NCBI GenBank assembly: GCA_965649765.1
Contig: OZ287753.1
Location: 13,888,001 to 13,952,000, forward strand
Direction of reading: 5' to 3'
Origin: Bispira polyomma
Lineage: Eukaryota
Length of the DNA stretch: 64,000 nucleotides
This document shows, piece after piece, positions 4,804 through 64,000 of the stretch; position 1 is the stretch's first letter; each line of letters begins with the position of its first letter. The position numbers were made by a program, and so were the translations under genes. The notes beneath the pieces are model-generated. The model made no database searches. It worked only from the letters and a program-made list of their open reading frames with translations, and was not told the origin of the DNA.

Positions 4804-4812
4804 CAGATCCTT

Positions 4813-5451: not shown

Positions 5452-5463
5452 AAAGAATTTAAG

Positions 5464-41000: not shown

Positions 41001-42602
41001 ACTAGAGTAGTCAATCAATTTATTTCCAGCAGGTGATAGTGATGTTCCAAGAGTATTGACTGGACTCCATAGCTGTCCCCTGGATATTAGTTGATCTTTC
41101 AATTAATTTGATAGATAATGATATCAATAATAGCCTGCTTCCCGGGGTACTTCAAGGTAATACATTTCGAATTTGATGTGGCAGTAGGCCCAGTCAAATA
41201 TTAATGCTACATTGCAAAACATACAATATATATTGTTTTATAGCATCAACATTTTTTTCCTATTTTTGTTTCTTTATTTAGAATACAACATTCAAAGAAA
41301 GAGATTAGAGAGAATATATTCATCATGTAGAAGATTGGGTAAATTATCAAATATAACAGAACAATATGAACATAAAATTTACAAAAGTCAAAAGAATATG
41401 ATCTTAGTGGATCAGAAGCACCACGTTACATTGCTTGGTTTACAAAAAGCTGGCTCTTCAACATGGAAATTGGCTTTGCTTAACAGCAGTGGAACACTTA
41501 AATCAGGCGATGTGAAAGGTATTCATACAACAGGCACCTTTAAGCGTGCCAAAGGAGTATACACAAATATGGCCTGCCTTATGGATCCTCAACTTGTTTT
41601 TACAGCACTGAGGAACGATTGTGTTATCTTAAATGTTCGGCATCCCTTTGACCGATTAGAGTCGGCATATGCAGATAAGGTTGTCGCAGAAAGACATGGT
41701 AGCGTTAGAACCACTATTCTAAAGAACAGAGGGCTGTCAGCCGAAGAAGTGGATAGGCTTAAAAACAATGGATCCAACATACAGTTCCACGAGTTTTTGC
41801 ATCACATCCTCTCTCACAATGACCATCATTGGGAGGCTCAGTTTAAGATCAGCTTTACTTGTGTTATTCCATACGGGTAAGTGTTTGTTTTATTTTACAT
41901 TTTGAACTAAATATGCACAGATTAAAATAATGTCAGAAGAATATAATGATTGGCCACTCTATGTAGCGATGATATGATCTACGCAACGTAAAACCAACAA
42001 AATTTTAAACAAAAGTCAAAGCAAACATGTCTGTAGTCATATTTGCATTTAGAATAGACGTTGATTGAAGAATATTCTACATAATTCATCAGCTGACTAT
42101 GGATGGAAAGATATATTTTAAATGAAGTCTCTCATTTTACTTAGATCACGATGGTAAAAATAAAGTTGCTCCTTATAATTTAATGCTGTCATCTGATGGT
42201 AGATAAAGTATTGTTTGCAATTTTTGTGATCATACTTACATTTTAGTTATCTAATATTTAAATCATTTTTTTCCTTGTTTTGATTACAGATATATTGCCA
42301 AATTAGAAACAATGACAAGGGATCTCAACATTGTTACTAATCAATTACTGTCAGGGTATGGCACAAACAAGAGATGGAATGTCAGGAGGAAAAACACAAC
42401 ACTCTCTACAACATACACAACAACACTTGGCCGTTATTTGCCTATTTTCTCAAAGTTGGAAAACAAGACGATGTGGGTAGACAAAATGGCAGAATACTAT
42501 AAATATGATCTTGAAGTGTTTGGTTACTCGTATTATTTTGACTCCAATGGAGATCTTTTTGCTACTTGTGTGGAGTATGATTCATTTGGCAACTGCATAT
42601 AG
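22954..42602 (+). CDS. Carbohydrate sulfotransferase (CHST8-14/Sulfotransfer_2 family), ~402 aa; join(22954..23056,25407..25457,35007..35057,35349..35399,36005..36049,41282..41876,42290..42602)
   Basis: All junctions are GT-AG and phase-compatible; 1209 nt open frame. N-terminal signal anchor, 5'-PSB LQKAGSSTWK, 3'-PB VRHPFDRLESAYADK, NDHHW, YIAKLETM, YKYDLEVFGY. Linking the 5' exons to the catalytic exons is inferred. Confidence 0.8.
25407..25457 (+). CDS. 51-nt stem microexon, copy 1
   Basis: TTGTAG|...AAG|GTACAT; (D/G)ISSTAPTLLASLDKNQ; phase 1-1. Confidence 0.7.
29200..30185 (-). pseudogene. Ngaro tyrosine recombinase
   Basis: FSFLRLSNL (~29690), WSKTLQ, CPVRAL, HAFRRS, and HG*TSDCVWRY in a shifted frame. 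Confidence 0.9.
30175..31830 (-). pseudogene. Ngaro RT/RNase H
   Basis: RRVIVDLSWP, KVDISRAFRHVPIDP, LPFG, YIDD (~31070), LDACLTGMGG, HNIAYLEMIN, NKVADLLSR. Confidence 0.92.
32300..33348 (-). pseudogene. Ngaro gag-like ORF1
   Basis: CAKCMGKHARPVGNKC; WPQNHVL..LSYDNLSLSQWVCGF..DFSWEAAKACHAV; frameshifted. Confidence 0.75.
35007..35057 (+). CDS. 51-nt stem microexon, copy 2
   Basis: TTGTAG|...AAG|GTACAT; DISSTAPRFQASLDKNQ. Confidence 0.7.
35349..35399 (+). CDS. 51-nt stem microexon, copy 3
   Basis: TTGTAG|...AAG|GTACAA; DISSTSPKSLASLDMNK. Confidence 0.7.
35471..35718 (+). mobile_element. tRNA-derived SINE, slightly 5'-shortened
   Basis: 14-bp TSD TTGAAAAATGGCCA (35457-35470, 35719-35732). 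Confidence 0.93.
36005..36049 (+). CDS. 45-nt stem exon
   Basis: TTCTTCCAG|...CAG|GTAAAT; DTNSDIVTTCTSRLT; phase 1-1. Confidence 0.6.
36128..40518 (-). mobile_element. Gypsy LTR retrotransposon of the Mag-like group, internally deleted, with short (~150-bp) LTRs
   Basis: LTRs at 36128-~36275 and 40369-40518. PBS TGGTGTGCAGCGGTGG abuts 40368; PPT at ~36289-36300. FQVDTGA, FSKFDL, APKRLQ, HTGVGRC..WPGM. Possible ATATA TSD. Confidence 0.9.
41282..41876 (+). CDS. Sulfotransferase catalytic exon
   Basis: Acceptor TTTCTTTATTTAG, both PAPS-binding motifs, donor GG|GTAAGT. Confidence 0.92.
42290..42602 (+). CDS. Sulfotransferase terminal coding exon
   Basis: Acceptor TTACAG. The phase-2 join gives CVIPYG-YIAKLETM, followed by YKYDLEVFGY and a TAG stop. 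Confidence 0.92.
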
Positions 42603-42856
42603 AACAGTTTTAATTTTTTTTATGTTTTTTTTTTAATATACACCACTTGGATAATTTTACTATTACATCAGCCTGTCATAAATTTAGACCAGTAGACTAT
42701 ACATTGCCAAAAATTTATTTTCTTGTAGGTTACATGTTTTTACATAATAGTGAACTGTTATACCAAGAATTATATTTTATCTGTACATTATAACATATAA
42801 ATTATTATTATATACAAACTTTTTGTGCACTTAATTTTGATGTATATCACATTCTA

Positions 42857-44020
42857 AGGCGAGATAAAACATAACAAGTAGCATAAGTTCGTGGGGAAAA
42901 AACGGGTCGGCATCAGAAAGCATTTGCGCAACCAGAGGAGAATGTGCTAACGGGGATAGGCTTCATGAAACAGGGGAGTCTTAAGCTCACGCCTGAAAGA
43001 TGAACGTGTGGGGGCAGGTCGTACAACAAGCGGGAGGCTGTTCCAATGTTTAGATCCGTCATTTGCAAATGATCTATCAAAGTGAGTTTTAAACTTATGA
43101 ATCCAAGGATTAAAGGTGGGAAGAATTAGGTATTTCTTTGTAGCAACAGTACGTCTGGTATTGACAGGATGTGTAGTAATTTATGTATTTATGGAAGTAC
43201 TGCAGCTGCCCAGAGTCCAAATGTCTGTAAATAAGGGTTGCAGTTTTGAAAGCAATTCTCTCATTAACTGGTAGCCAATGTGGGGACTTGAGCACTGGTG
43301 TAATGTGGGACCACTTGCGGAAACCTGTGACAACTCGTACCAACGCATTTTGCAGACACTGCAATCTTCTCAGGTTACCTTTGGATAAACCACGATATAG
43401 TGAATTGCAGTAGTTGAGTCTGCTACTGACAGGTGTGTTTGCCGCCGAGACGGCCATCGTCCTTGGTAGGTACTGCCTTGTTCTCCATACGTCTCGAAGT
43501 CCAACAAAACATGACCTGCAAACAGCATCCACCTGCTTTTTGAAAGAAAAATTGCAGTCGAATATGACACCCAGGTTCCGCACTGATTCAGCCGCCTCAA
43601 ACCTCTTGCCAAGTATGTGGGTTGGGAGTAGAGGTTCTAACCTCTTTCGCATGGCTACTGCTCCAAAAACCATAAACTCAGTCTTATAAGAATTAAGCTT
43701 GAGCTTGTTTGAATTCATCCGTGATTGGATCTCGCTTAGGCACCTCTCGAGATCTGAGTATCATCTGCATAAAAATGGTATTTCAGTGGTTTAAAGGCAG
43801 AGATGATTTTTTCTAGAGGTGTAGTGTACATAAAAACCAGATGGGGCCCAGAACTGATCCCTGTGGTACCCTGTACTTCAGGATACTTAGAACAGATATA
43901 GCGCTGCAAATCTTTATAGACTGACACCTATTTGACAGACATAAACCATTTGAGGGCAACACCTGATAAGCCATACATGTGTTTGAGGCGGCCCAGGAGA
44001 GTAGCATGGTAAATAGTGTC
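42857..44020 (-). mobile_element. L2/CR1-group LINE 3' fragment (mirror copy ~61814-62977, +)
   Basis: VPQGSVLGP, YADDTQI, KLKLNSYKTEF, SRLNYCNSL, HWLPV. Confidence 0.9.
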
Positions 44021-45275
44021 GACTATTTATTATAAATGGGCACTAAACATCAACAAATTATTTTGATTTTAATTAATATCATCTAATTCTTAATCCTTAA
44101 AATATATGCAATTTCCTTTCAAAAATATTGCAAAGTAAAAGTATAGAAATAAACTTTGTATTGTATGTTTTATCATTCAATGGAACTATAGCGAAAAACT
44201 ATTGTTTTTTCAAGCATTAGAGTTTACATGTTTATTAATTCAAGAACATTCTAGATTCCTACATTTGTTGCATATATCTTTTTGTAACTGTTATATAGCC
44301 TGCCTATATAACCTACATTTTAGTGGACAAAGTATATAATTAGTGTAAATTTTCTTCTGTGTCAAACTTTAAATGCATTTGGAACGCTTGTTTGTATACC
44401 GGAGAAAATTCATGCGGAAGGAACCGCAGGCTCCGCCGGCTCCCGCATTTTCTATTGGCTATAGCTCAGCAACCAATGGGCAGGTTCTTTTCAAATTTAG
44501 CACATGTGTCAGTAGCCCTGGGTAATTTTTGTGAATATGGTATCATTTCAACCAATCAGAGAAGTTACATGACCAAAAACAGGTTTTCTAAAAGGGTTTG
44601 ATTGTCTGGATGAAAACTTAAAAAGCACTTTATCTATTCTTATAAAATTTGGCAAGTAGATTTCATATATAGATATCTGGACAACATAAACTTTTGGATG
44701 TGATCCGATACAAAATGGCCAAATTATAACCTTGAATTAAACATGAACAATTTTTGAAACTATGAAAAAGAAAAATCCCATTGGGACGCTTTGTTTTTGC
44801 AGTGTAAAAACAATTTTTTTTTATTTACAAAGCAGTTCTCTAGTTTTTATTAAAAAAAAAACACGCACAAGGTACTTGCTTCTATTTGGTGTTTATGCCT
44901 TCTTTATTTAATGAATTTTTATATATTTCTAAGGAAAACGATATATCAAAAATCATATCTCAACAACCCACATTTCTGTTTGCAATGGAGCTAGAATTTT
45001 AAGATTCTATGAAGTTGAAGAATATGCAGTAAAATATGTAACATCACTTCACGATTCAGTTATAAAATAACAAAAGGTGAAAACCCCAAATAGAAGCAAG
45101 TACCATTTATTTAGGGAAAAAAAAAGAGAACCGTGAGTGATAATAGAAGTTACATTCTTTCCCCGACAATGCTTTCTGCTAGCAAATCTCCTATTTGGGG
45201 ATTTAGAAACAATGAAAATGAGGCCGAAAATGTAAACAGCATTCTCTGATATTCCTAATATTTTGTATTATCGCC

Positions 45276-45528
45276 GGGGCCGCAGTGGCCTAGTGGTTAG
45301 CAAGCATTGCGCTTCACAATCACTGGTCTCTCACCTCTGGGTGGCGTGAGTTCGAATGCCGCTGATGCCTATGTGGGAAAGGTGGTAGTTCCTTATTGTG
45401 GGCCGCTGGTTTCTCTGCAGAACCTTGACCGACTGTATGCAGTGTTTCCTCCAGCGTTTCCAACTACCCGTCCCAATATAACCTGCTAAAAGGTACTAGA
45501 GTGGACGTTAAAAATATCCAAATTCAAA
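45276..45528 (+). mobile_element. tRNA-derived SINE (mirror copy ~60309-60561, -)
   Basis: Full-length family match. Partly decayed TSD TTGTATTATcgcc / TTGTATTATtacc. Confidence 0.93.
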
Positions 45529-46189
45529 TTGTATTATTACCAATGAAGACTGACCCTGTAGTGACTGTGTCCTTTTCAATTTGGACAGCTATATAGTTAC
45601 TGGTTCACTATTTTCAGACTTGTCAGTAACTTGTTTTGTAGTAGCATTATTATGAAATGGCCGCCAAGCCATTCTTCTGTTCAGAATATTTTTAATCAAA
45701 AGGAAATCAAGAAAAGGTAAATTTTGAAAGACGTGATGCTAATAAATTCACTACATATAAAGACTTTTTTCTCCTATTAAAACCTTAATAGTGTTTATCA
45801 ACATCTCATGTTGAGTGACTATTTCGTAAGTGCACTGTGTGGAGTTACTATTTGTGAATAGCCACTAGGTAGGGTTCTTGCTCTTCAAAGGTTAGTACAT
45901 TAAATTAGTTTAAATGTCATTTAGCCTTAACTGTAACATACGTAAATATACTGAATTAAATCAACAAATATGGAAGAATAGAAATACTAGCTTCATAATG
46001 GTGTATGATATAATAGATTTATAACATGCATAATTGATGCCAGGCATGTCCTAAAGTGTTAAGCTTATGAAACCAGTAAGTTTTCTGGGATCTTATATTG
46101 GTTGATAAATTGTTTCATAGCGTGGGTTCTGCAATTAACAAGGCATAGGATCCATTTTACCGGTGCTGGTACTGATATCAGAGACTGAG

Positions 46190-46350
46190 ATTCTGTTTCC
46201 CCTAGTAAGTCTGCTGAAAGACGGCATTGAGGCAAGATATTTGGGCTGACAAATGATGAGAGCTTTGTATGTAGTGACATTGGTCTTGAAGATGATGCGG
46301 TACTTGATAGGTAGCCAATGGAGCCTTTTGAAAAAAGGAGCCATACTGAC
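46190..46350 (-). mobile_element. Short LINE RT fragment (mirror ~59487-59647)
   Basis: KRLHWLPIKYRIIFK..QPKYLAS..LTRGNR. Confidence 0.8.
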
Positions 46351-47173
46351 GTAAGATCCGACATAGCACACAACAAATGATTCTGGCTTGGCTAAAACAT
46401 TTGCAACTGGTAGATACAGAAACCCCACAATCATTAGGTGAATTGAAAACCTGCCTTTTCCTAGCATACACCCCTATGGATATTTGGACTAAATATGTGA
46501 AAACAAAACCCCATATACTGTGGGGTAAAATGTGCAGATTTGGACTTCAAGTCAATCCCTCTTAATAGCACCTGGTCCACAAACAACGGGGATTATAATT
46601 TTTCTTTACTGGAACATTGCCGTTGTTGTCTGTGACTGTTTTGTCCTCACGCATTCTAAAATCTAAACACTATTTAGGGGAACTGGTTTTAGATAAATGA
46701 GGCTCTAGAATGTAAAAAACGTAATAAAATGTGGCATGTGGTTTTGCCGACAACAATTCCTCACACATACCGCTTGGAATTATAATCGATATAGTTGCAA
46801 CTAGTCTGTTATTGCAAGAAACTAAGATAAATATGTTGGAATAGTAAAAGATAAATACTTGATGTATACTAATTAATTTAATAACATGACCCCTCCATTG
46901 TGGTCTCCTAGGTATAATACAAGAAACACATCACAGCAATGCTTTGCGAATAAAAAATTTTTTTTTCACTTGAATGAAAAAAAAAATTGCATGCATCACT
47001 CGAAGTTGTGCTGCATCATTTAGTTAAGCTACATTAAAAAAAATTAAAATAAGATGACATCACATTTTGCAGCACAAATACATTGATTAATTTCATCCAC
47101 ACTTTGCCAATACAAAACAAGTTTTTTAGCCCAAATTATATGCACATATCCCCAGATTATAAGACACTTTATA

Positions 47174-47390
47174 CCTGGGCTTCCTTTCAGCCAATCCCGA
47201 CGTCGGCCGATCTATTCAAATCAGAGTCAAGCCGACATCAACCAATGTAGCGTTTACTTTCATCCGATTTAATCTGATGGTGGTACAGACATCTGCTCAC
47301 AATTGATGAAAATCTGATGAAAGGAAGCACTTCATAACATCAAATAGTGAACGACAAATTTGGCAAAAATAAGTTGAAAGGAAGCCTAGG
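47174..47390. mobile_element. Small MITE-like element with ~18-bp TIRs (mirror ~58447-58663)
   Basis: CCTGGGCTTCCTTTCAGC versus GTTGAAAGGAAGCCTAGG. Confidence 0.5.
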
Positions 47391-47709
47391 CTGAGTGTTC
47401 ATTTCCAGCATTATGCAAACAACTTTATGTTTTCTAGATTGTAGTATATTATTATTGATGCAAGGCTACTCCTAAAGAGTAACACGATAATCTATTAAGT
47501 CTACTAGTTCAGAAACATAACCTGGAAAACTTATGACAGTTACAGATCAACAGCTTGCATATTACATTATAACAGACTTTTTAATCCAATACATGTAAAC
47601 TTCCTTAAATACTGATTTGTCTGTCGACCATTATCTGCTCAAAATAATATTGATAATTTCATAATGTTCATTTACTTATTCAAAAGTTTAGACAATTTAA
47701 TTATTACTG

Positions 47710-48620
47710 GAACAGCTATCTAGCTGCCTGTCTTCGATTGAATCTTGGATGAATAATTCAAAATTGAAATTCAACCCTGACAAAACAGAATTCCTACTCA
47801 TTGGCTCAAAACATCAGAGAGAAAAGGTTCTTGACTTCTTCCCTGCTACTCTCCTTGGTAACGGCACTGTTCCTGCTGACAGTGCGAAGAACCTAGGAGT
47901 TACTTTTGACTCTGACTTCTCCTTCATAAAACATGTCTCGAATATCTGTCATTCCTGCTACGGCAACATCCGTGACTTCCGCAGGATTCGACGATATTTA
48001 ACCCAAGAAAATGCCATTGCAGTGGCAAATGCCCTGGTATCAAGTCGACTAGATTACTGTAACTCACTACTATATGGAATTGGAAAGGGCCAAAACTACA
48101 GAAAATACAAAATAACCTGTGCAGAATACTAAGCCATGCTGGCCCTCGCACTAACACTACTCCCCTGCTGAAACAATTACATTGGTTACCTATTGAGTTT
48201 TGCATTAACTTCAAATTGTCCTCATTTAAGACAGTCCATGTACATCAACCTGCCTACTTATCATCTATGCTGTCTCTCAGCAGTCTCACCAGATTCAATT
48301 GTCTCTCCACCTCTGGTTTCCAACCAAAAAAACAAGCTGGTTCAAAATCATTCGCAGTTGCAGCACCTGCTGAGTGGAATAGCCTCCCTATCAGTCTTCG
48401 GACTGAGACAAGCGTCATGGGTTTCAGAAAAAGGCTCAAAACACATTTGTATCAGCTCGCTTTTCCACCTTAGCATGCCATCTGATGGTCACGACTGAAG
48501 CTCCGATCACAAACCTTTTCTGTCTACCGGACTATGCTCTTGCACACTGACTAGGATATGCGCCACAGAGGATGCCTGGTCATTGATTGTGGCGCTATAG
48601 AAGTAAAACAATTAACATTC
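47710..48620 (+). mobile_element. 5'-truncated L2-group LINE with 3' UTR (mirror ~57217-58127, -)
   Basis: Same family as 4813. Ends RKRLKTHLYQLAFPP* with a GGCGCTATAGAA tail. Confidence 0.92.
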
Positions 48621-51600
48621 ATTTTTTTCTCTTTGCATTTGCTTTGATCTAGTTTAAAATCTATTATTCAATCAAAGTTTAACAAGGCATTCATATTGTT
48701 TCAGTCACCTTGTAATAAAAATTATGTACAGCACATTTAAAGCTGATTTTGTTCTGTCCTGTGTTTGCTACACCGAATGGCTAAATATTATATATATGGT
48801 AAATACTTAATGTAAAAGAAATAATTTACCAACGAAACTTTACATTTTTTATCTAGATGTTTATCATCTAGATTATGTGATTGTTTTTTTTTCAATTTTT
48901 AGGACAGCACTTTTGACTATTTCCTTACATTATTTTTACTTCATTTTTCGTAGTCAATACTGGTTGGTACCAAGGATGAGGAGCATCTTACAATATATTT
49001 ACTATTTCTTTTTTTTTTTGTTTGTTAAAGACATTTATTACTTTGGCCTCGTAATTACCGCATTTTTCCTCATCTTTCCACGCTTGGACAGACAAGTAAA
49101 CAAAGTTAGATATACAAGGAAAAGTATGGGTTTGAAGATATATATATGATATATATACACCTATACCGATGAGATACCTGTAAATTTCATGTAACTTGCT
49201 CCAAGTTGTGAGAACACACGCTTTTTCATTTTGGTTTTGACCACTAGACAGCGCAACACTACAGTGTTTTTTTATTATAGGTATTTCAGTACATAAAGTA
49301 AGTAAGTACATAAATTTCAACTACGTGTGTAGCAAAAACTGAAAAATGCTCCATTATTTGTAGGAAAGCAAGATGGATGGAAATCTCAATAGATGTACCC
49401 TTAAATGTATGTATATATATCTTGCCCCATATGCACATATAGTTGCTTTAATCTATCACAATTTGTTTAGTTTGCGAAAGTTCCTCCACAGCTTTCGAAA
49501 CTGATACATTTGTGGCATTAAATAATATGTAAACAACATTAAAAAATGGCCATCGACCAAGTTCAATCACACGAGTCAAAGGTCAGACCTCTTAGACGGG
49601 TTAATTGAAACGTCAACAAAAGTACCAAGTACCAACTTCCATATAAGGAAATTAAACTGTATATGGACCTACAAATAGGCCGTTGCATCAGTCTGCTGTA
49701 TACGTAAGATATATATAATTTCATATATTCACTATGTTTCTTCTTGTATATATCCTTGACTGGGGAACATATATTAGTATATGATATTTGAAAGAAGCAA
49801 TTAACAGAATCGACATATATACAGAGAAAATTAAAAACGAAGTTTGGATTTAAATATTATATGAGCACATTGTGTGAAGAATAAATGAAGCGTAGAAATG
49901 GTGTACAACGAGGCAGGGTTATTAAGTTAATTATATTAAAAAATAAATTGTTATAAAACGGGCAAAAAATTCTTTCATATATCTGTATCTATAAATGAAG
50001 GGGATATAAAGTATTTACCTGTAGATTAATCCCTTCAATTTTCGTGTAGTACTTAAGTACAGATAAACATGTGTTGATGAATCTTGTAATATACTTCATC
50101 CCTTTGAAGTAAAAATAGGGTCTCAGATGGGGCGAGTTCCTGATTGGCCAATTATAATATAGATATATATAGCATAAAATTGCCTTTGTAAACTGCTCAT
50201 TTGTATGTACTGCTGCTGTATATGGACAGTTTAATATCCTTATATGGAAGTTAGTATTTTAATCTTCTGTACTTTCTGCTCACTTGCTGCCGACTTTCTG
50301 ACATTTCTTGTAAGTCGCTATAACACACCACTTCTAACTTTGGTTTCGACCAATACACAGCGCCACACTACAGTCTTTTATTAGTGTACAAAGTACTTCA
50401 AAGCAATGCAGTGTAATATATAGGAAGTATTGTTACAACACATGATGATGGGATTGGCCGATAGATATATAACTAAAAAGCAAAATTGAAGGGAATCATA
50501 TACAGGTAAATACTTTATATTCCCTTCATTTTATAATACACTGTGTAATATTATTATGCTCCACTGTATATATTTTTAAGCAAGTTTCATCGATTTATAG
50601 ATTAATTAACTGACCTTGTTTTTTAGTACGTCTGTGGTTGATATATACATCGGAAGTGAAGCACATGTATGTGAACCATAATAAAGAGACGTCTTTGCAA
50701 GTTAGGCAATCACCTTAGAAAGCACCCAACCTCCATATAAGGATATTTAACTGTCTGAACTTACATTTAGACATATATACCTTGCCAGGAAGATAGACGT
50801 AGACAACAACTGATTATTGTTTACAAAAAAGACAGATGGACTTTTATATGTAGCAAACGCTTTAACATAAAATAAATACTTGCAAATAGACCCTTAAATG
50901 ATAAAATATAATGTAGTTTAAATATATGACTGAAATATATCCAGGTATATAACCACAATATACTAAAACAGTTTAGCATAACATGAAGCCGTTCTGTTAA
51001 TTGCTTCCTTCAAATATCATACACTAATGTATGTTCTGAATTCAAAGATCAAAGCCTCATTTGGGAAGTTTCGTTAATTGCTTCCTTCTAATATAGACGT
51101 TGGCATAATACACACACCATTTCTACGTATCAAGGTAATTCCTGTGAAGTACACAGATAGATATGCATGCATACTTGGGGTGAAGGTTGTTAGGTGCTTC
51201 ACGTCGTTGACAAATAGCAGCTTAAAATTATGGAATATATACTACAAGGAAGAAAAATGGAAAATTAGGTCCCGTATGAATAATAACGGCAAAATTCTAG
51301 AATATATGCTAGGAAGAAAAAAGCTATTAATAAAAAAAGACATACACAGATAGATATACACGTGTCATTTACTGGACAATGCTGAAGGAGGAGTAGTTCT
51401 GGTGTCCACAAACTATATTTATATACAACTACAAATATAACGAAAATAAAAGGATATATCAAGGGCAATATGCAGACAGCATCGTCATTCAAATATAAGT
51501 TTTCTCGACATATTTCCTGTGAAGTACACAGATGGATAGGGTGAAGGTCGTTGCAGAATAGTAAATAACGTGTCGTTGGATACCATTTCTACGCTTCAAT

Positions 51601-52938: not shown

Positions 52939-53046
52939 CCTACAACTCCATCTTGGGTGTTGATGGTCAATGTCTGTTTGTATGGAGCGCTTTCATTGGT
53001 TACTGTACCAGCTATTCTGATTGGCTGTTCACAGTCACGTGACGCT
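52939..53046 (-). promoter_or_regulatory. Candidate Pol II promoter / first exon in the palindrome loop
   Basis: Minus-strand order: GTCACGTGAC (53034-43), CCAAT (53020-24), CCAAT (52995-99), YY1-like CAAGATGG (52948-55), donor AG|GTAAAC (52939). Motif evidence only. Confidence 0.5.
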
Positions 53047-53107
53047 TCATAATAATAAATATTGCCTAATTAGAAGCACACAGAAATGAAGTAGCAAATT
53101 GAAGGGA

Positions 53108-56100
53108 TTAATATGTTTAAGTCATATAATTGCAACAAAAACTGTGTAAGCAGGCCTGATATACATAAGGTAAATATTATTTACGTTTTATTTAAGGATA
53201 TTGCATCTAATTGTGAAGCCACAATCTTCAATTTTTTTATAAAACGGTATTTCCGGTGATCAACAGATGATTATTGTTAACAAAAAAACACATGGACTTC
53301 TGCATAGCAAAAATGGATGCCAATTGAATGGATTAATATACAGGTAAATTTTAAAAATGCTATATATATTTGTATGGCAAAAAAAGAGTATATCTTACTT
53401 GTGTTTCGAAATCAGAGCAGAGTGCTTTATTACTTCGAAATTAGAAATAAATTAAATGGTATTTGAGGAAATGGAATTGTGAAGCCATATTTTGTAAATT
53501 ACGCACATAATCTGAGCGGTCAAAATCTGTGTATGTACTTGAGTTACTACAAGTATATTTTACATTTGCAGAATAAGGAAATATTATGGAAATAACATGA
53601 AGATATAATGCAAAATATTGTTTCATACTTCTTTTCAGATTTCCATCCATTTCCTTTTGTTTTATTTCGATGTATATATTTTTATACACTGTATATGAAA
53701 CGTTATATTGACGTCACCAGAACTACTCATTTGCAGAATAAGAAAATATTATGGAAATAACATGAAGATATAAGGCAAAATATTGTTTCTTACTTCTTTT
53801 CAGATTTCCATCCATTTCCTTTTGTTTTATTTCGATGTATATATTTTTATAAACTCTATATGAAACGTTATAATGACGTCATCAGAACTACTCTGCATTA
53901 GCATTGTTTAGTAAATACCACATGTATATCTATCTGTGTACTTCTTTTTTATTAATAGTTTTTTTATTCCTTGTAAATATTCTAGCATTTTGCCATTATT
54001 ATCCATTATTATTATTACGCGACCTAATTTTCTATTTTTCTTCCTTGCAGTATATATTCCATCATATAAAGCTGTAATTTGTCAAAAACGTGAAGCACCT
54101 GTATATGAAACGTCATAATAACGTCACCAGAACTAATCTTGCAGTATAAGGACACAGATTGATATGTATATACTTGGGGTTTAAAAATCGCGATTTACCT
54201 ATATATTGATCCCTTCAATTTTCATTTTAAATGAAAACATTGAAGCGTAGAAATGGTATCCAACGACACGTTATTTACTATTCTGCAACGACCTTCACCC
54301 TATCCATCTGTGTACTTCACAGGAAATATGTTGAGAAAACTTATATTTGAATGACGATGCTGTCTGCATATTGCCCTTGATATATCCTTTTATTTTCGTT
54401 ATATTTGTAGTTGTATATAAATATAGTTTGTGGACACCAGAACTACTCCTCCATCAGCATTGTCCAGTAAATGACACGTGTATATCTATCTGTGTATGTC
54501 TTTTTTTATTAATAGCTTTTTTCTTCCTAGCATATATTCTAGAATTTTGCCGTTATTATTCATACGGGACCTAATTTTCCATTTTTCTTCCTTGTAGTAT
54601 ATATTCCATAATTTTAAGCTGCTATTTGTCAACGACGTGAAGCACCTAACAACCTTCACCCCAAGTATGCATGCATATCTATCTGTGTACTTCACAGGAA
54701 TTACCTTGATACGTAGAAATGGTGTGTGTATTATGCCAACGTCTATATTAGAAGGAAGCAATTAACGAAACTTCCCAAATGAGGCTTTGATCTTTGAATT
54801 CAGAACATACATTAGTGTATGATATTTGAAGGAAGCAATTAACAGAACGGCTTCATGTTATGCTAAACTGTTTTAGTATATTGTGGTTATATACCTGGAT
54901 ATATTTCAGTCATATATTTAAACTACATTATATTTTATCATTTAAGGGTCTATTTGCAAGTATTTATTTTATGTTAAAGCGTTTGCTACATATAAAAGTC
55001 CATCTGTCTTTTTTGTAAACAATAATCAGCTGTTGTCTACGTCTATCTTCCTGGCAAGGTATATATGTCTAAATGTAAGTTCAGACAGTTAAATATCCTT
55101 ATATGGAGGTTGGGTGCTTTCTAAGGTGATTGCCTAACTTGCAAAGACGTCTCTTTATTATGGTTCACATACATGTGCTTCACTTCCGATGTATATATCA
55201 ACCACAGACGTACTAAAAAACAAGGTCAGTTAATTAATCTATAAATCGATGAAACTTGCTTAAAAATATATACAGTGGAGCATAATAATATTACACAGTG
55301 TATTATAAAATGAAGGGAATATAAAGTATTTACCTGTATATGATTCCCTTCAATTTTGCTTTTTAGTTATATATCTATCGGCCAATCCCATCATCATGTG
55401 TTGTAACAATACTTCCTATATATTACACTGCATTGCTTTGAAGTACTTTGTACACTAATAAAAGACTGTAGTGTGGCGCTGTGTAGCGGTCGAAACCAAA
55501 GTTAGAAGTGGTGTGTTATAGCGACTTACAAGAAATGTCAGAAAGTCGGCAGCAAGTGAGCAGAAAGTACAGAAGATTAAAATACTAACTTCCATATAAG
55601 GATATTAAACTGTCCATATACAGCAGCAGTACATACAAATGAGCAGTTTACAAAGGCAATTTTATGCTATATATATCTATATTATAATTGGCCAATCAGG
55701 AACTCGCCCCATCTGAGACCCTATTTTTACTTCAAAGGGATGAAGTATATTACAAGATTCATCAACACATGTTTATCTGTACTTATGTACTACACGAAAA
55801 TTGAAGGGATTAATCTACAGGTAAATACTTTATATCCCCTTCATTTATAGATACAGATATATGAAAGAATTTTTTGCCCGTTTTATAACAATTTATTTTT
55901 TAATATAATTAACTTAATAACCCTGCCTCGTTGTACACCATTTCTACGCTTCATTTATTCTTCACACAATGTGCTCATATAATATTTAAATCCAAACTTC
56001 GTTTTTAATTTTCTCTGTATATGTCGATTCTGTTAATTGCTTCTTTCAAATATCATATACTAATATATGTTCCCCAGTCAAGGATATATACAAGAAGAAA

Positions 56101-59100
56101 CATAGTGAATATATGAAATTATATATATCTTACGTATACAGCAGACTGATGCAACGGCCTATTTGTAGGTCCATATACAGTTTAATTTCCTTATATGGAA
56201 GTTGGTACTTGGTACTTTTGTTGACGTTTCAATTAACCCGTCTAAGAGGTCTGACCTTTGACTCGTGTGATTGAACTTGATCGATGGCCATTTTTTAATG
56301 TTGTTTACATATTATTTAATGCCACAAATGTATCAGTTTCGAAAGCTGTGGAGGAACTTTCGCAAACTAAACAAATTGTGATAGATTAAAGCAACTATAT
56401 GTGCATATGGGGCAAGATATATATACATACATTTAAGGGTACATCTATTGAGATTTCCATCCATCTTGCTTTCCTACAAATAATGGAGCATTTTTCAGTT
56501 TTTGCTACACACGTAGTTGAAATTTATGTACTTACTTACTTTATGTACTGAAATACCTATAATAAAAAAACACTGTAGTGTTGCGCTGTCTAGTGGTCAA
56601 AACCAAAATGAAAAAGCGTGTGTTCTCACAACTTGGAGCAAGTTACATGAAATTTACAGGTATCTCATCGGTATAGGTGTATATATATCATATATATATC
56701 TTCAAACCCATACTTTTCCTTGTATATCTAACTTTGTTTACTTGTCTGTCCAAGCGTGGAAAGATGAGGAAAAATGCGGTAATTACGAGGCCAAAGTAAT
56801 AAATGTCTTTAACAAACAAAAAAAAAAAGAAATAGTAAATATATTGTAAGATGCTCCTCATCCTTGGTACCAACCAGTATTGACTACGAAAAATGAAGTA
56901 AAAATAATGTAAGGAAATAGTCAAAAGTGCTGTCCTAAAAATTGAAAAAAAAACAATCACATAATCTAGATGATAAACATCTAGATAAAAAATGTAAAGT
57001 TTCGTTGGTAAATTATTTCTTTTACATTAAGTATTTACCATATATATAATATTTAGCCATTCGGTGTAGCAAACACAGGACAGAACAAAATCAGCTTTAA
57101 ATGTGCTGTACATAATTTTTATTACAAGGTGACTGAAACAATATGAATGCCTTGTTAAACTTTGATTGAATAATAGATTTTAAACTAGATCAAAGCAAAT
57201 GCAAAGAGAAAAAAATGAATGTTAATTGTTTTACTTCTATAGCGCCACAATCAATGACCAGGCATCCTCTGTGGCGCATATCCTAGTCAGTGTGCAAGAG
57301 CATAGTCCGGTAGACAGAAAAGGTTTGTGATCGGAGCTTCAGTCGTGACCATCAGATGGCATGCTAAGGTGGAAAAGCGAGCTGATACAAATGTGTTTTG
57401 AGCCTTTTTCTGAAACCCATGACGCTTGTCTCAGTCCGAAGACTGATAGGGAGGCTATTCCACTCAGCAGGTGCTGCAACTGCGAATGATTTTGAACCAG
57501 CTTGTTTTTTTGGTTGGAAACCAGAGGTGGAGAGACAATTGAATCTGGTGAGACTGCTGAGAGACAGCATAGATGATAAGTAGGCAGGTTGATGTACATG
57601 GACTGTCTTAAATGAGGACAATTTGAAGTTAATGCAAAACTCAATAGGTAACCAATGTAATTGTTTCAGCAGGGGAGTAGTGTTAGTGCGAGGGCCAGCA
57701 TGGCTTAGTATTCTGCACAGGTTATTTTGTATTTTCTGTAGTTTTGGCCCTTTCCAATTCCATATAGTAGTGAGTTACAGTAATCTAGTCGACTTGATAC
57801 CAGGGCATTTGCCACTGCAATGGCATTTTCTTGGGTTAAATATCGTCGAATCCTGCGGAAGTCACGGATGTTGCCGTAGCAGGAATGACAGATATTCGAG
57901 ACATGTTTTATGAAGGAGAAGTCAGAGTCAAAAGTAACTCCTAGGTTCTTCGCACTGTCAGCAGGAACAGTGCCGTTACCAAGGAGAGTAGCAGGGAAGA
58001 AGTCAAGAACCTTTTCTCTCTGATGTTTTGAGCCAATGAGTAGGAATTCTGTTTTGTCAGGGTTGAATTTCAATTTTGAATTATTCATCCAAGATTCAAT
58101 CGAAGACAGGCAGCTAGATAGCTGTTCCAGTAATAATTAAATTGTCTAAACTTTTGAATAAGTAAATGAACATTATGAAATTATCAATATTATTTTGAGC
58201 AGATAATGGTCGACAGACAAATCAGTATTTAAGGAAGTTTACATGTATTGGATTAAAAAGTCTGTTATAATGTAATATGCAAGCTGTTGATCTGTAACTG
58301 TCATAAGTTTTCCAGGTTATGTTTCTGAACTAGTAGACTTAATAGATTATCGTGTTACTCTTTAGGAGTAGCCTTGCATCAATAATAATATACTACAATC
58401 TAGAAAACATAAAGTTGTTTGCATAATGCTGGAAATGAACACTCAGCCTAGGCTTCCTTTCAACTTATTTTTGCCAAATTTGTCGTTCACTATTTGATGT
58501 TATGAAGTGCTTCCTTTCATCAGATTTTCATCAATTGTGAGCAGATGTCTGTACCACCATCAGATTAAATCGGATGAAAGTAAACGCTACATTGGTTGAT
58601 GTCGGCTTGACTCTGATTTGAATAGATCGGCCGACGTCGGGATTGGCTGAAAGGAAGCCCAGGTATAAAGTGTCTTATAATCTGGGGATATGTGCATATA
58701 ATTTGGGCTAAAAAACTTGTTTTGTATTGGCAAAGTGTGGATGAAATTAATCAATGTATTTGTGCTGCAAAATGTGATGTCATCTTATTTTAATTTTTTT
58801 TAATGTAGCTTAACTAAATGATGCAGCACAACTTCGAGTGATGCATGCAATTTTTTTTTTCATTCAAGTGAAAAAAAAAATTTTTATTCGCAAAGCATTG
58901 CTGTGATGTGTTTCTTGTATTATACCTAGGAGACCACAATGGAGGGGTCATGTTATTAAATTAATTAGTATACATCAAGTATTTATCTTTTACTATTCCA
59001 ACATATTTATCTTAGTTTCTTGCAATAACAGACTAGTTGCAACTATATCGATTATAATTCCAAGCGGTATGTGTGAGGAATTGTTGTCGGCAAAACCACA

Positions 59101-62100
59101 TGCCACATTTTATTACGTTTTTTACATTCTAGAGCCTCATTTATCTAAAACCAGTTCCCCTAAATAGTGTTTAGATTTTAGAATGCGTGAGGACAAAACA
59201 GTCACAGACAACAACGGCAATGTTCCAGTAAAGAAAAATTATAATCCCCGTTGTTTGTGGACCAGGTGCTATTAAGAGGGATTGACTTGAAGTCCAAATC
59301 TGCACATTTTACCCCACAGTATATGGGGTTTTGTTTTCACATATTTAGTCCAAATATCCATAGGGGTGTATGCTAGGAAAAGGCAGGTTTTCAATTCACC
59401 TAATGATTGTGGGGTTTCTGTATCTACCAGTTGCAAATGTTTTAGCCAAGCCAGAATCATTTGTTGTGTGCTATGTCGGATCTTACGTCAGTATGGCTCC
59501 TTTTTTCAAAAGGCTCCATTGGCTACCTATCAAGTACCGCATCATCTTCAAGACCAATGTCACTACATACAAAGCTCTCATCATTTGTCAGCCCAAATAT
59601 CTTGCCTCAATGCCGTCTTTCAGCAGACTTACTAGGGGAAACAGAATCTCAGTCTCTGATATCAGTACCAGCACCGGTAAAATGGATCCTATGCCTTGTT
59701 AATTGCAGAACCCACGCTATGAAACAATTTATCAACCAATATAAGATCCCAGAAAACTTACTGGTTTCATAAGCTTAACACTTTAGGACATGCCTGGCAT
59801 CAATTATGCATGTTATAAATCTATTATATCATACACCATTATGAAGCTAGTATTTCTATTCTTCCATATTTGTTGATTTAATTCAGTATATTTACGTATG
59901 TTACAGTTAAGGCTAAATGACATTTAAACTAATTTAATGTACTAACCTTTGAAGAGCAAGAACCCTACCTAGTGGCTATTCACAAATAGTAACTCCACAC
60001 AGTGCACTTACGAAATAGTCACTCAACATGAGATGTTGATAAACACTATTAAGGTTTTAATAGGAGAAAAAAGTCTTTATATGTAGTGAATTTATTAGCA
60101 TCCCGTCTTTCAAAATTTACCTTTTCTTGATTTCCTTTTGATTAAAAATATTCTGAACAGAAGAATGGCTTGGCGGCCATTTCATAATAATGCTACTACA
60201 AAACAAGTTACTGACAAGTCTGAAAATAGTGAACCAGTAACTATATAGCTGTCCAAATTGAAAAGGACACAGTCACTACAGGGTCAGTCTTCATTGGTAA
60301 TAATACAATTTGAATTTGGATATTTTTAACGTCCACTCTAGTACCTTTTAGCAGGTTATATTGGGACGGGTAGTTGGAAACGCTGGAGGAAACACTGCAT
60401 ACAGTCGGTCAAGGTTCTGCAGAGAAACCAGCGGCCCACAATAAGGAACTACCACCTTTCCCACATAGGCATCAGCGGCATTCGAACTCACGCCACCCAG
60501 AGGTGAGAGACAAGTGATTGTGAAGCGCAATGCTTGCTAACCACTAGGCCACTGCGGCCCCGGCGATAATACAAAATGTTAGGAATATCAGAGAATGCTG
60601 TTTACATTTTCGGCCTCATTTTCATTGTTTCTAAATCCCCAAATAGGAGATTTGCTAGCAGAAAGCATTGTCGGGGAAAGAATGTAACTTCTATTATCAC
60701 TCACGGTTCTCTTTTTTTTCCCTAAATAAATGGTACTTGCTTCTATTTGGGGTTTTCACCTTTTGTTATTTTATAACTGAATCGTGAAGTGATGTTACAT
60801 ATTTTACTGCATATTCTTCAACTTCATAGAATCTTAAAATTCTAGCTCCATTGCAAACAGAAATGTGGGTTGTTGAGATATGATTTTTGATATATCGTTT
60901 TCCTTAGAAATATATAAAAATTCATTAAATAAAGAAGGCATAAACACCAAATAGAAGCAAGTACCTTGTGCGTGTTTTTTTTAATAAAAACTAGAGAACT
61001 GCTTTGTAAATAAAAAAAAATTGTTATTACACTGCAAAAACAAAGCGTCCCAATGGGATTTTTCTTTTTCATAGTTTCAAAAATTGTTCATGTTTAATTC
61101 AAGGTTATAATTTGGCCATTTTGTATCGGATCACTTCCAAAAGTTTATGTTGTCCAGATATCTATATATGAAATCTACTTGCCAAATTTTATAAGAATAG
61201 ATAAAGTGCTTTTTAAGTTTTCATCCAGACAATCAAACCCTTTTAGAAAACCTGTTTTTGGTCATGTAACTTCTCTGATTGGTTGAAATGATACCATATT
61301 CACAAAAATTACCCAGGGCTACTGACACATGTGCTAAATTTGAAAAGAACCTTCCCATTGGTTGCTGAGCTATAGCCAATAGAAAATGCGGGAGCCGGCG
61401 GAGCCTGCGGTTCCTTCCGCATGAATTTTCTCCGGTATACAAACAAGCGTTCCAAATGCATTTAAAGTTTGACACAGAAGAAAATTTACACTAATTATAT
61501 ACTTTGTCCACTAAAATGTAGGTTATATAGGCAGGCTATATAACAGTTACAAAAAGATATATGCAACAAATGTAGGAATCTAGAATGTTCTTGAATTAAT
61601 AAACATGTAAACTCTAATGCTTGAAAAAACAATAGTTTTTCGCTATAGTTCCATTGAATGATAAAACATACAATACAAAGTTTATTTCTATACTTTTACT
61701 TTGCAATATTTTTGAAAGGAAATTGCATATATTTTAAGGATTAAGAATTAGATGATATTAATTAAAATCAAAATAATTTGTTGATGTTTAGTGCCCATTT
61801 ATAATAAATAGTCGACACTATTTACCATGCTACTCTCCTGGGCCGCCTCAAACACATGTATGGCTTATCAGGTGTTGCCCTCAAATGGTTTATGTCTGTC
61901 AAATAGGTGTCAGTCTATAAAGATTTGCAGCGCTATATCTGTTCTAAGTATCCTGAAGTACAGGGTACCACAGGGATCAGTTCTGGGCCCCATCTGGTTT
62001 TTATGTACACTACACCTCTAGAAAAAATCATCTCTGCCTTTAAACCACTGAAATACCATTTTTATGCAGATGATACTCAGATCTCGAGAGGTGCCTAAGC

Positions 62101-63885
62101 GAGATCCAATCACGGATGAATTCAAACAAGCTCAAGCTTAATTCTTATAAGACTGAGTTTATGGTTTTTGGAGCAGTAGCCATGCGAAAGAGGTTAGAAC
62201 CTCTACTCCCAACCCACATACTTGGCAAGAGGTTTGAGGCGGCTGAATCAGTGCGGAACCTGGGTGTCATATTCGACTGCAATTTTTCTTTCAAAAAGCA
62301 GGTGGATGCTGTTTGCAGGTCATGTTTTGTTGGACTTCGAGACGTATGGAGAACAAGGCAGTACCTACCAAGGACGATGGCCGTCTCGGCGGCAAACACA
62401 CCTGTCAGTAGCAGACTCAACTACTGCAATTCACTATATCGTGGTTTATCCAAAGGTAACCTGAGAAGATTGCAGTGTCTGCAAAATGCGTTGGTACGAG
62501 TTGTCACAGGTTTCCGCAAGTGGTCCCACATTACACCAGTGCTCAAGTCCCCACATTGGCTACCAGTTAATGAGAGAATTGCTTTCAAAACTGCAACCCT
62601 TATTTACAGACATTTGGACTCTGGGCAGCTGCAGTACTTCCATAAATACATAAATTACTACACATCCTGTCAATACCAGACGTACTGTTGCTACAAAGAA
62701 ATACCTAATTCTTCCCACCTTTAATCCTCGGATTCATAAGTTTAAAACTCACTTTGATCGATCATTTGCAAATGACGGATCTAAACATTGGAACAGCCTC
62801 CCGCTTGTTGTACGACCTGCCCCCACACGTTCATCTTTCAGGCGTGAGCTTAAGACTCCCCTGTTTCATGAAGCCTATCACCGTTAGCACATTCTCCTCT
62901 GGTTGCGCAAATGCTTTCTGATGCAGACCCGTTTTTTCCCCACGAACTTATGCTACTCATTATGTTTTATCTCGCCTTAGAATGTGATATACATCAAAAT
63001 TAAGTGCACAAAAAGTTTGTATATAATAATAATTTATATGTTATAATGTACAGATAAAATATAATTCTTGGTATAACAGTTCACTATTATGTAAAAACAT
63101 GTAACCTACAAGAAAATAAATTTTTGGCAATGTATAGTCTACTGGTCTAAATTTATGACAGGCTGATGTGTAATAGTAAAATTATCCAAGTGGTGTATAT
63201 TAAAAAAAAACATAAAAAAAATTAAAACTGTTCTATATGCAGTTGCCAAATGAATCATACTCCACACAAGTAGCAAAAAGATCTCCATTGGAGTCAAAAT
63301 AATACGAGTAACCAAACACTTCAAGATCATATTTATAGTATTCTGCCATTTTGTCTACCCACATCGTCTTGTTTTCCAACTTTGAGAAAATAGGCAAATA
63401 ACGGCCAAGTGTTGTTGTGTATGTTGTAGAGAGTGTTGTGTTTTTCCTCCTGACATTCCATCTCTTGTTTGTGCCATACCCTGACAGTAATTGATTAGTA
63501 ACAATGTTGAGATCCCCTGTCATTGTTTCTAATTTGGCAATATATCTGTAATCAAAACAAGGAAAAAAATGATTTAAATATTAGATAACTAAAATGTAAG
63601 TATGATCACAAAAATTGCAAACAATACTTTATCTACCATCAGATGACAGCATTAAATTATAAGGAGCAACTTTATTTTTACCATCGTGATCTAAGTAAAA
63701 TGAGAGACTTCATTTAAAATATATCTTTCCATCCATAGTCAGCTGATGAATTATGTAGAATATTCTTCAATCAACGTCTATTCTAAATGCAAATATGACT
63801 ACAGACATGTTTGCTTTAACTTTTGTTTAAAATTTTGTTGGTTTTACGTTGCGTAGATCATATCATCGCTACATAGAGTGGCCAA
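53108..63885 (-). repeat. Right arm of giant inverted repeat
   Basis: Reverse complement of 41950-52732. About 25-30 differences noticed by eye (not exhaustive). Confidence 0.98.
63233..63545 (-). pseudogene. Inverted duplicate of the sulfotransferase terminal exon (open frame, R>G change)
   Basis: Mirror of 42290-42602 with an intact acceptor. Upstream exons are not in the window, so it could belong to a complete paralog. Confidence 0.85.
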
Positions 63886-64000
63886 CTATTGAGTTTCGTA
63901 TTAAATTTAAGGTAATTGTCCTCACTTTTAAGACAGTTCATGTGCATCAACCTGCCTATTTATCTTCTATGCTGTCTCTTAGCGATCCCACCAGAGGCAA
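63886..64000 (+). mobile_element. L2-group LINE fragment starting exactly where right-arm homology stops
   Basis: CTATTGAGTTTCGTATTAAATTTAAGGTAATTGTCCTC.. matches 5300-5413. Confidence 0.9.

What the first reader, a model, noticed from the sequence alone, without database searches (positions are those of the whole stretch)
41950..63885. ~22-kb near-perfect palindrome that copies the 3' end of a sulfotransferase gene in antisense
Seen: two ~10.8-kb arms, >99% identical by eye, separated by only 375 bp. They carry the gene's last exon, 3' UTR, LINEs and a SINE. Differences include many substitutions rather than only homopolymer slips. At 42875-76 one arm has CA and the other TG, as expected from independent deamination of one ancestral CpG, which argues against a simple read fold-back artifact. 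Inference: a recent inverted duplication that could give tail-to-tail paralogs, long dsRNA on read-through (endo-siRNA source), or arm-to-arm gene conversion.
Basis: partly seen in the sequence, partly recalled or inferred. Interest (0 to 1): 0.85.

Follow-up and report, generated by a model that had tools for sequence, protein, structure and literature searches.

The report
Young 22-kb palindrome beside sulfotransferase gene
An animal chromosome carries a 10.8-kb stretch, including the last exon of a sulfotransferase gene, copied back-to-front next to itself; this looks like an ordinary recent inverted duplication, and no public reads could be consulted to rule out an assembly error.

Summary
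The arms are 41950-52732 and 53108-63885, separated by a 375-bp spacer. They differ by 25 substitutions and 6 indels (99.7% identity). The palindrome lies inside an 84-Mb contig, with no N and no further inverted homology within 114 kb.

The left arm continues naturally from a Sulfotransfer_2 gene. The boundary is 70 bp into the last intron, so the right arm holds an orphan antisense copy of the last coding exon.

Both new joints are breaks inside dispersed repeats and are near-blunt:
- The inner joint (52732|ACA|52736) cuts an old ~1-kb repeat.
- The outer joint (63885|63886) abuts a 5'-truncated, 3'-intact young LINE copy.

Eight of the 25 substitutions sit at CpG sites, which make up 3.5% of bases. 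The differences are therefore real mutations, which rules out a single-molecule fold-back read.

Best reading (about 0.7): a real, young inverted segmental duplication made by end-joining or template switching, possibly LINE-associated, with no shown function.

The scan's notes list other, smaller palindromes in this genome (6.8 kb, 2.66 kb, 599 bp). I did not check them.

Unexplained: DNA homology to an upstream paralog stops exactly at 41950.

The parts
41212..41880 (+). Large catalytic coding exon of a Sulfotransfer_2 (carbohydrate sulfotransferase-like) gene. It lies just outside the left arm and has a GTAAGT donor at 41881. There is no ATG ahead of its hydrophobic N-terminal stretch, so at least one further upstream exon is likely.
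   Evidence: Pfam PF03567, E = 3e-17, profile positions 3-164 of 252. Translation and donor read. A paralogous exon (81% aa identity) lies at window -19284..-18673.
41950..52732 (+). Left arm of the palindrome (10,783 nt). On its outer side it is collinear with the gene: the rest of the last intron, the last exon, then downstream DNA.
   Evidence: The order and orientation match the upstream paralog, whose DNA homology resumes at 42113-42620.
41951..42112 (.). 162-nt intron segment found only in the two arms. It has no counterpart in the paralog's intron. Its left edge coincides with the arm boundary, which is unexplained.
   Evidence: Only two genomic copies. Paralog homology ends at 41950. 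Smith-Waterman against the paralog's 880-nt intron middle gives z = 1.3-1.4.
42290..42602 (+). Last coding exon of the sulfotransferase gene (acceptor AG at 42288-42289, stop codon at 42600-42602).
   Evidence: Pfam PF03567, profile positions 202-252 of 252, E = 0.0093, below the curated cut-off. 74% aa identity to the paralog's last exon. The reading across the splice site is continuous.
42801..44020 (-). Old interspersed-repeat fragment, with genomic copies at 84-89% identity. It holds a 202-aa open frame that has no Pfam match.
47707..48619 (+). Young ~913-nt non-LTR retroelement 3' piece, with many genomic copies at 94-96% identity. It is present in both arms, so it predates the duplication.
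   Evidence: It shares its 3' region with the element at 63886 at 82% identity.
52114..52732 (-). Inner end of the left arm: a reverse-complement partial copy of a ~1-kb dispersed repeat, cut off at 52732.
   Evidence: other copies align to 52114-52732 and, in the opposite sense, to 52736-53726.
52733..52735 (.). Three inserted bases (ACA) at the new inner joint. No adapter-like sequence is present.
   Evidence: The left arm ends at 52732 and repeat homology starts at 52736. In other copies the repeat continues leftwards with a conserved sequence that is absent here.
52733..53107 (+). Spacer (375 nt). Bases 52736-53107 are the part of the same repeat copy that the left arm lacks. The spacer runs naturally into the right arm.
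   Evidence: More than 40 genomic copies at 88-90% identity cover 52736-53140 and beyond.
53108..63885 (-). Right arm of the palindrome (10,778 nt), the reverse complement of the left arm.
63233..63545 (-). Orphan antisense copy of the last coding exon, with one amino-acid difference (Arg to Gly). No partner catalytic exon lies nearby.
   Evidence: tblastn 98.97%. Translation.
63886..64000 (+). Start of a 5'-truncated, 3'-intact copy of a young LINE family. It runs to 64357, beyond the window. It forms the outer joint of the right arm with no perfect microhomology (5 of 7 bases match imperfectly).
   Evidence: A longer family member has RVT_1, E = 4e-26. Only 2 private substitutions in 436 nt.

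Best explanation
This is most likely a real, evolutionarily young inverted segmental duplication. A ~11.2-kb piece was copied: from 70 bp inside the sulfotransferase gene's last intron, through the last exon and downstream DNA, into an old dispersed repeat. The copy was set down head-to-head immediately after the original. That created two new joints, both inside interspersed repeats and both near-blunt. The inner joint (52732|ACA|52736) has three inserted bases. The outer joint (63885|63886) attaches the copy to a truncated LINE. Whatever originally followed the left arm (the rest of the repeat and beyond) was lost. This pattern fits double-strand-break repair by end joining, or replication template switching, between sister chromatids. 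A LINE insertion event may have bridged the outer joint. Shown: the structure and the joints. Inferred: the mechanism, a young age (0.23% divergence between arms, of the order of 10^5-10^6 generations if no gene conversion has acted), and the lack of function. The parent gene stays intact. The copy is an orphan antisense terminal exon with no shown role. I infer from general knowledge of palindrome stability that the 375-bp asymmetric spacer makes the palindrome tolerable.
For: The structure is exact. The palindrome is internal to an 84.5-Mb contig, with no N within -20 kb to +30 kb and a gap-free exit into flanking DNA. Each new joint occurs once in the assembly. Neither joint could come from a repeat-overlap mis-join. 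At the inner joint, two different internal positions of one repeat copy meet in opposite orientation with an ACA insertion. At the outer joint, the arm side is unique sequence. Two independent new joints 11 kb apart would need a doubly chimeric path to be an artefact. The arm differences are biological: 8 of 25 substitutions are in CpG context against 3.5% of bases (P = 1.5e-6), CpG o/e is 0.60, and there are two adjacent double changes. Left arm plus gene is collinear with the tandem paralog. The LINE copy at the outer joint is the youngest of 16 compared (2 private changes in 436 nt), which is compatible with the age of the arms (Poisson P = 0.10). Precedent for LINE-associated deletions, duplications and fold-back joints without target-site duplication: PMC7058536.
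Against: An arm divergence of 0.23% is also a plausible allelic divergence, and I could not estimate heterozygosity because the unplaced contigs are satellites or GC-rich arrays. The transition:transversion ratio is only 13:12. A break inside a pre-existing LINE copy would look the same as a LINE-mediated joint, so the mechanism is not pinned down. The arm boundary coincides to the base with the end of paralog homology, and this model does not explain that.
Confidence: 0.7

Rival explanations
1. Assembly artefact. The true genome has one copy of the arm. A chimeric or fold-back long read, or a graph traversal that turned back along the other haplotype, produced the second arm, and the arm differences are allelic variants sorted at random between the two arms.
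For: Fold-back reads are a documented artefact (about 0.6% of ONT genomic reads, PMC12870357). Whole-genome amplification makes palindromic chimeras (PMC6218980, title and abstract only). The 0.23% divergence with CpG-type changes fits alleles as well as paralogs. 4 of the 6 indels are homopolymer-length changes. No reads could be consulted.
Against: A single-molecule fold-back would give identical arms, and it turns within about 200 bp. Here the turn is 375 bp and the arms carry real mutations. The structure is not at a contig end or a gap, and it leaves the right arm through a second unique joint into 70 Mb of further chromosome. That needs two chimeric joints to be preferred over the well-covered true path. 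No repeat overlap is available at either joint. HiFi data show almost no fold-back reads, but the platform used for this assembly is unknown.
Confidence: 0.2
2. A real but older palindrome whose arms are kept 99.7% alike by continuing arm-to-arm gene conversion, as in sex-chromosome palindromes, so that the low divergence understates its age.
For: The differences are unevenly spread. One 2.6-kb stretch has none (P about 0.01), there is a single difference between 45734 and 49557, and 9 events fall in the outermost 1.2 kb. That pattern would fit a recent conversion tract.
Against: The LINE copy at the outer joint has only 2 private changes in 436 nt, so nothing attached to the structure looks old. 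No outgroup or population data are available. The unevenness could equally come from local variation in mutation rate or coalescence time.
Confidence: 0.1
3. A functional hairpin-RNA (endo-siRNA) or antisense locus. Transcription through both arms, or from the flank into the right arm, makes double-stranded RNA against the sulfotransferase 3' end and regulates the gene or its paralog.
For: An antisense copy of the terminal exon and downstream sequence exists. In Drosophila, young hpRNA loci derive from inverted copies of their target genes (PMC10317233 and PMC10292708, abstracts).
Against: The two exon copies are 20.6 kb apart, with 10-kb repeat-rich arms, unlike compact hpRNA hairpins. There is no evidence of transcription and no Rfam match. 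The first polyadenylation-like signal lies about 500 bp past the stop codon, so read-through of 20 kb is unlikely. The spacer is an internal piece of an old dispersed repeat, not a recognisable promoter.
Confidence: 0.05

Closest known systems
Large near-identical palindromes / inverted segmental duplications (for example primate X and Y palindromes)
   Same: Two long arms in inverted orientation, more than 99% identical, around a unique spacer and carrying gene sequence.
   Different: The arms carry only a gene's terminal exon, not whole genes. The spacer is very short (375 bp). No evidence of long-term maintenance by gene conversion or of conservation across species. The type of chromosome is unknown.
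Fold-back inversions, and inverted duplications from template switching or break repair
   Same: A head-to-head joint with a sub-kb asymmetric spacer, a short non-templated insertion at the joint, and loss of the sequence that originally followed.
   Different: The duplicated arm is only 10.8 kb and ends at a second joint back into the same chromosome. It is a small local insertion-deletion event, not a chromosome-arm-scale fold-back. The joints are near-blunt rather than microhomology-rich.
LINE-1-mediated rearrangements (deletions, duplications, fold-back bridges; PMC7058536)
   Same: A 5'-truncated, 3'-intact retroelement piece sits exactly at a rearrangement joint, no target-site duplication is seen, and sequence is lost next to it.
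   Different: Here the element sits at the outer edge of one arm, not at the fold-back centre. It is a germline, invertebrate, non-L1 LINE family. A break inside a pre-existing copy would give the same picture.
Drosophila hpRNA loci
   Same: An inverted duplicate of part of a protein-coding gene that could in principle fold into double-stranded RNA against its parent.
   Different: The arms are at least an order of magnitude longer (my recollection of hpRNA sizes), mostly repeat and intergenic DNA, and no transcription or small RNAs have been shown.
Fold-back read artefacts in long-read data (PMC12870357)
   Same: Two reverse-complementary halves that turn back close to the same genomic point.
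   Different: The turn is 375 bp apart rather than within 200 bp. The arms differ by CpG-enriched mutations. The structure continues seamlessly into flanking chromosome.

Membership tests
Large genomic palindrome (inverted segmental duplication) | Two arms of several kb in inverted orientation with more than 99% identity | tested here: met
   10,783 and 10,778 nt, 99.685% identical.
Large genomic palindrome (inverted segmental duplication) | A unique spacer between the arms | tested here: met
   375 nt at 52733-53107. The full joint-plus-spacer sequence occurs once in the assembly.
Large genomic palindrome (inverted segmental duplication) | Both copies present in the organism's DNA (spanning reads, doubled depth) | not testable with these tools
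Exact-protein look-ups were empty.
Large genomic palindrome (inverted segmental duplication) | Arm identity maintained by gene conversion over evolutionary time | tested here: inconclusive
   Differences are uneven (maximum gap 2.6 kb, P about 0.01). There is no outgroup or population data.
Fold-back / template-switch inverted duplication | A head-to-head joint between nearby positions of the same locus, with a short insertion or microhomology | tested here: met
   52732|ACA|52736 joins positions 375 nt apart of one repeat copy in opposite orientation.
Fold-back / template-switch inverted duplication | Loss of the sequence distal to the break | tested here: inconclusive
   The repeat is cut at 52736, although other copies continue. 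The original continuation is not present within 50 kb. The size of any deletion cannot be known without an ancestral allele.
LINE-mediated rearrangement | A retroelement piece with an intact 3' end and a truncated 5' end exactly at the joint | tested here: met
   63886-64357 aligns to the 3' 430 nt of the family, up to the common 3' end. Other copies extend variably upstream, and one carries RVT_1.
LINE-mediated rearrangement | No target-site duplication at the aberrant insertion, although normal copies have one | tested here: inconclusive
   No duplication flanks the copy, but four other copies and the arm copy show none either, at the resolution of pairwise boundaries.
LINE-mediated rearrangement | The insertion is of the same age as the rearrangement | tested here: inconclusive
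   2 private substitutions in 436 nt, against about 0.5 expected from the arm divergence (Poisson P = 0.10). Compatible, but not discriminating.
hpRNA / endo-siRNA locus | An inverted repeat homologous to a protein-coding target | tested here: met
   Antisense copy of the last exon at 63233-63545.
hpRNA / endo-siRNA locus | A single transcript spans both arms and yields about 21-nt siRNAs | not testable with these tools
   No RNA runs could be reached.
Long-read fold-back artefact | Both halves derive from one molecule, so they are identical apart from read error | tested here: not met
   25 substitutions, 8 of them in CpG context (P = 1.5e-6).
Long-read fold-back artefact | The turn-back lies within about 200 bp, and the palindrome ends where the read ends | tested here: not met
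   The turn is 375 nt. The right arm continues without a gap into unique and repeat DNA of the same 84-Mb contig. The 200-bp criterion is from PMC12870357.
Sulfotransfer_2 (PF03567) gene | A match to the family profile above the curated cut-off | tested here: met
   The large exon scores 64 bits against a cut-off of 22. The last exon alone scores 16.6 bits, below the cut-off, but covers the C-terminal profile positions 202-252. The exons were searched separately and the joined protein was not searched.

The most novel reading that the evidence does not exclude
The palindrome is real and was created in the germline in one step by an aberrant LINE integration: the element's cDNA bridged a broken sister-chromatid end. 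It is now a nascent hairpin or antisense locus against a carbohydrate sulfotransferase. That would be a caught-in-the-act example, outside Drosophila, of how gene-targeting inverted repeats are born.
Probability: 0.07. Interest if true: 0.6.

Novelty: new member of a known kind. Interest (0 to 1): 0.3.

Why it matters
If real, this is a cleanly resolved, very young autosome-scale palindrome with both breakpoints readable to the base. It would be a useful natural example of how inverted duplications arise in an invertebrate germline: near-blunt joints inside repeats, possibly with LINE involvement. It would also show how orphan antisense exons, the raw material for hairpin RNAs, are seeded. If it is an artefact, it flags a 10.8-kb false duplication in a chromosome-level assembly. 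In either case the sulfotransferase gene itself appears untouched, so no immediate functional consequence is evident.

Tried and rejected
- **Independent assemblies.** Exact look-ups of the ORF spanning the outer joint, and of the last-exon ORF, found no record.
- **Longer palindrome interrupted by an insertion.** Rejected. There is no inverted homology between -20 kb..41949 and 63886..+30 kb other than dispersed repeats.
- **Spacer as a complete small transposon with terminal repeats, whose end sets the joint.** Rejected. Other copies of the repeat continue past 52736.
- **162-nt outer segment as a transposon end.** Rejected. It is unique to the two arms.
- **Tail-to-tail paralogs.** Rejected. 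There is no second catalytic exon to the right.
- **Repeat-overlap mis-join at either joint.** Rejected.
- **Estimating heterozygosity from unplaced contigs.** Failed. They are satellites or GC-51% arrays.
- **Species identification by protein homology.** Failed. Only four unnamed proteins matched, at 42-47% identity.
- **Rfam and tRNA scans of the arm.** Nothing found.
- **Polarising the exon difference with the paralog.** Only one site, so uninformative.
Full report
**1. Observation**

The window is G000:C6:13888001-13952000 of a 1.035-Gb, 75-contig animal assembly. C6 is 84.5 Mb.

- An inverted-repeat scan and BLAST find one inverted pair: 41950-52732 and 53108-63885.
- A global alignment gives 10,783 and 10,778 nt. 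The arms differ by 25 substitutions (13 transitions, 12 transversions) and 6 indels. Four indels are homopolymer-length changes, plus one AC and one AT.
- The spacer is 375 nt.
- The CA/TG difference at 42875-76 is present.
- I joined the window to 20 kb on the left and 30 kb on the right. The joined 114 kb has no N and no further inverted homology beyond the arms, other than dispersed repeats.

**2. The gene**

- A 222-aa open frame at 41212-41880 matches Sulfotransfer_2 (PF03567, E = 3e-17). It ends at a GTAAGT donor.
- A second exon at 42290-42602 matches the C-terminal end of the same profile, but below the curated cut-off (E = 0.0093).
- I searched the exons separately. The joined protein was not searched.
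- A tandem paralog with the same two-exon layout lies about 60 kb upstream (81% and 74% aa identity).
- The left arm starts 70 nt into the last intron, so the left arm is the gene's natural continuation.
- The right arm carries an antisense copy of the last exon with one Arg/Gly difference.
- No copy of the catalytic exon lies to its right. It is therefore an orphan exon, not a tail-to-tail paralog.

**3. The centre**

- The spacer and the first ~620 nt of the right arm form one copy of a ~1-kb dispersed repeat. More than 40 copies at 88-90% identity exist in the genome.
- In other copies the repeat continues leftwards past the position matching 52736, with a conserved sequence. Here it stops. 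After three extra bases (ACA), the left arm's inner end follows, which is the reverse complement of the same repeat copy from 53108 onward.
- The spacer therefore runs naturally into the right arm, and 52732|ACA|52736 is a new joint made by a break inside the repeat.
- Only three bases at the joint are unaccounted for, so there is no adapter sequence.

**4. The outer joint**

- To the right of 63885 lies a 472-nt element (63886-64357). It aligns to the 3' end of a young, abundant family, up to that family's common 3' terminus.
- Other copies extend upstream to varying lengths, and one carries a reverse-transcriptase domain (RVT_1, E = 4e-26). The family is therefore a non-LTR retrotransposon, and this copy is 5'-truncated.
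- At the joint only 5 of 7 bases match imperfectly between the arm end and the element's missing upstream part.
- The arm side is unique sequence.
- This copy has the fewest private substitutions of the 16 copies compared (2 in 436 nt). That is compatible with the age implied by the arms (Poisson P = 0.10).
- No target-site duplication is visible, but the family shows none clearly in other copies either.

**5. Nature of the arm differences**

- Only 3.5% of arm bases lie in CpG, and CpG o/e is 0.60. Even so, 8 of 25 substitutions are in CpG context, counting the inferred ancestral CpG at 42875-76 (binomial P = 1.5e-6). These are real mutations, not read or polishing noise.
- They are spread unevenly. 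One 2.6-kb interval has none (P about 0.01), and 9 events lie in the outermost 1.2 kb.

**6. Real or artefact**

- A single-molecule fold-back read is excluded by point 5. It is also disfavoured by geometry: such artefacts turn within about 200 bp (PMC12870357).
- A repeat-overlap mis-join is excluded at both joints.
- The palindrome is not at a contig end or a gap, and it needs two independent new joints 11 kb apart.
- What I cannot exclude is an artefact in which the two arms are the two alleles of a single-copy locus.
  - Exact-protein look-ups in public assemblies were empty.
  - The unplaced contigs are satellites or GC-rich arrays, which gives no way to estimate heterozygosity.
- My estimate is about 0.7 that the structure is real as assembled and about 0.2 that it is an artefact.

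**7. Mechanism (inferred)**

- Both joints are near-blunt: one has a 3-nt insertion, the other no perfect microhomology. This points to end joining of broken ends or template switching between sister chromatids.
- The net result is an inverted copy of about 11.2 kb, together with loss of whatever followed the left arm.
- A LINE-associated origin is possible. In that model the element's cDNA bridges a free end that corresponds to position 41950. It has precedent in L1-mediated deletions, duplications and fold-back bridges without target-site duplication (PMC7058536).
- A break inside a pre-existing LINE copy would look identical, so the LINE role is not established.
- The asymmetric 375-nt spacer would reduce hairpin or cruciform formation. 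This is from my general knowledge of palindrome stability and was not tested.

**8. Unexplained**

- DNA homology between this gene and its upstream paralog ends at 41950, the first base of the left arm. It resumes at 42113.
- The intervening 162 nt are unique to the two arms and show no similarity to the paralog's 880-nt intron middle (z = 1.3-1.4).
- A chance coincidence is roughly 1% by my own estimate.
- It may mean that the gene-side boundary is itself a repaired break. For example, a piece bounded by 41950 and the repeat could have been excised, dimerised head-to-head and re-ligated. I could not test this.

**9. Function**

Nothing shows that the palindrome does anything.

- The two exon copies are 20.6 kb apart.
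- The first polyadenylation-like signal is about 500 nt past the stop codon.
- There is no Rfam or tRNA match in the arm.
- The spacer is an internal piece of an old repeat rather than a recognisable promoter.
- The hpRNA analogy (PMC10317233 and PMC10292708, abstracts) remains a possibility with low probability.

**10. Verdict**

- Observation: confirmed.
- Interpretation: partly supported. A recent inverted duplication is supported. Its reality in the organism, and any dsRNA or gene-conversion role, are untested.
- Classification: a new member of a known kind (a young inverted segmental duplication).
- Interest: modest, mainly as a cleanly resolved breakpoint example or as an assembly-quality flag.

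The scan's earlier notes mention other, smaller palindromes in this genome (6.8 kb, 2.66 kb, 599 bp). I did not examine them.

Noticed in passing
outside the window: window coordinates -19341..-17203 (L019:659-2797): A tandem paralog of the Sulfotransfer_2 gene with the same two-exon layout (81% and 74% aa identity). Its last intron is 1.19 kb and contains satellite-like units that also form a tandem array on C1 at about 49.07 Mb.
   Followed up: partly
L024 (C9:56054771-56055671) and L026 (C9:63224993-63225893): Two loci 7 Mb apart on contig 9 are 99.3% identical over all 901 nt in inverted orientation, flanks included. This indicates another young inverted segmental duplication, of unknown extent.
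   Followed up: no
L017:1-357 (window 64001-64357): The LINE copy at the outer joint carries a 37-nt insertion relative to 15 other copies. In translation it appears as a repeated short peptide stretch, which suggests a small internal tandem duplication.
   Followed up: no
window 53728-53894 (mirror 51946-52112): The far end of the ~1-kb repeat at the palindrome centre is followed by a second partial copy of its last ~170 nt.
   Followed up: partly
G000 contigs C16, C30 (L034, L037) and C20, C25, C40-C70 (L035, L036, L038-L041): The unplaced contigs sampled are either highly repetitive satellite (GC 47%, compresses to about 6%) or GC-51% sequence unlike the 35% chromosomal background. The latter may be ribosomal or another array. 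None looks like a retained haplotig.
   Followed up: no
window 4810-5452 and 47707-48335: A further copy of the young LINE 3' family lies 43 kb upstream in the same orientation (91% identity). Together with reverse-transcriptase frames at 4768-5526 and 11248-11973, this shows a retroelement-rich neighbourhood.
   Followed up: partly
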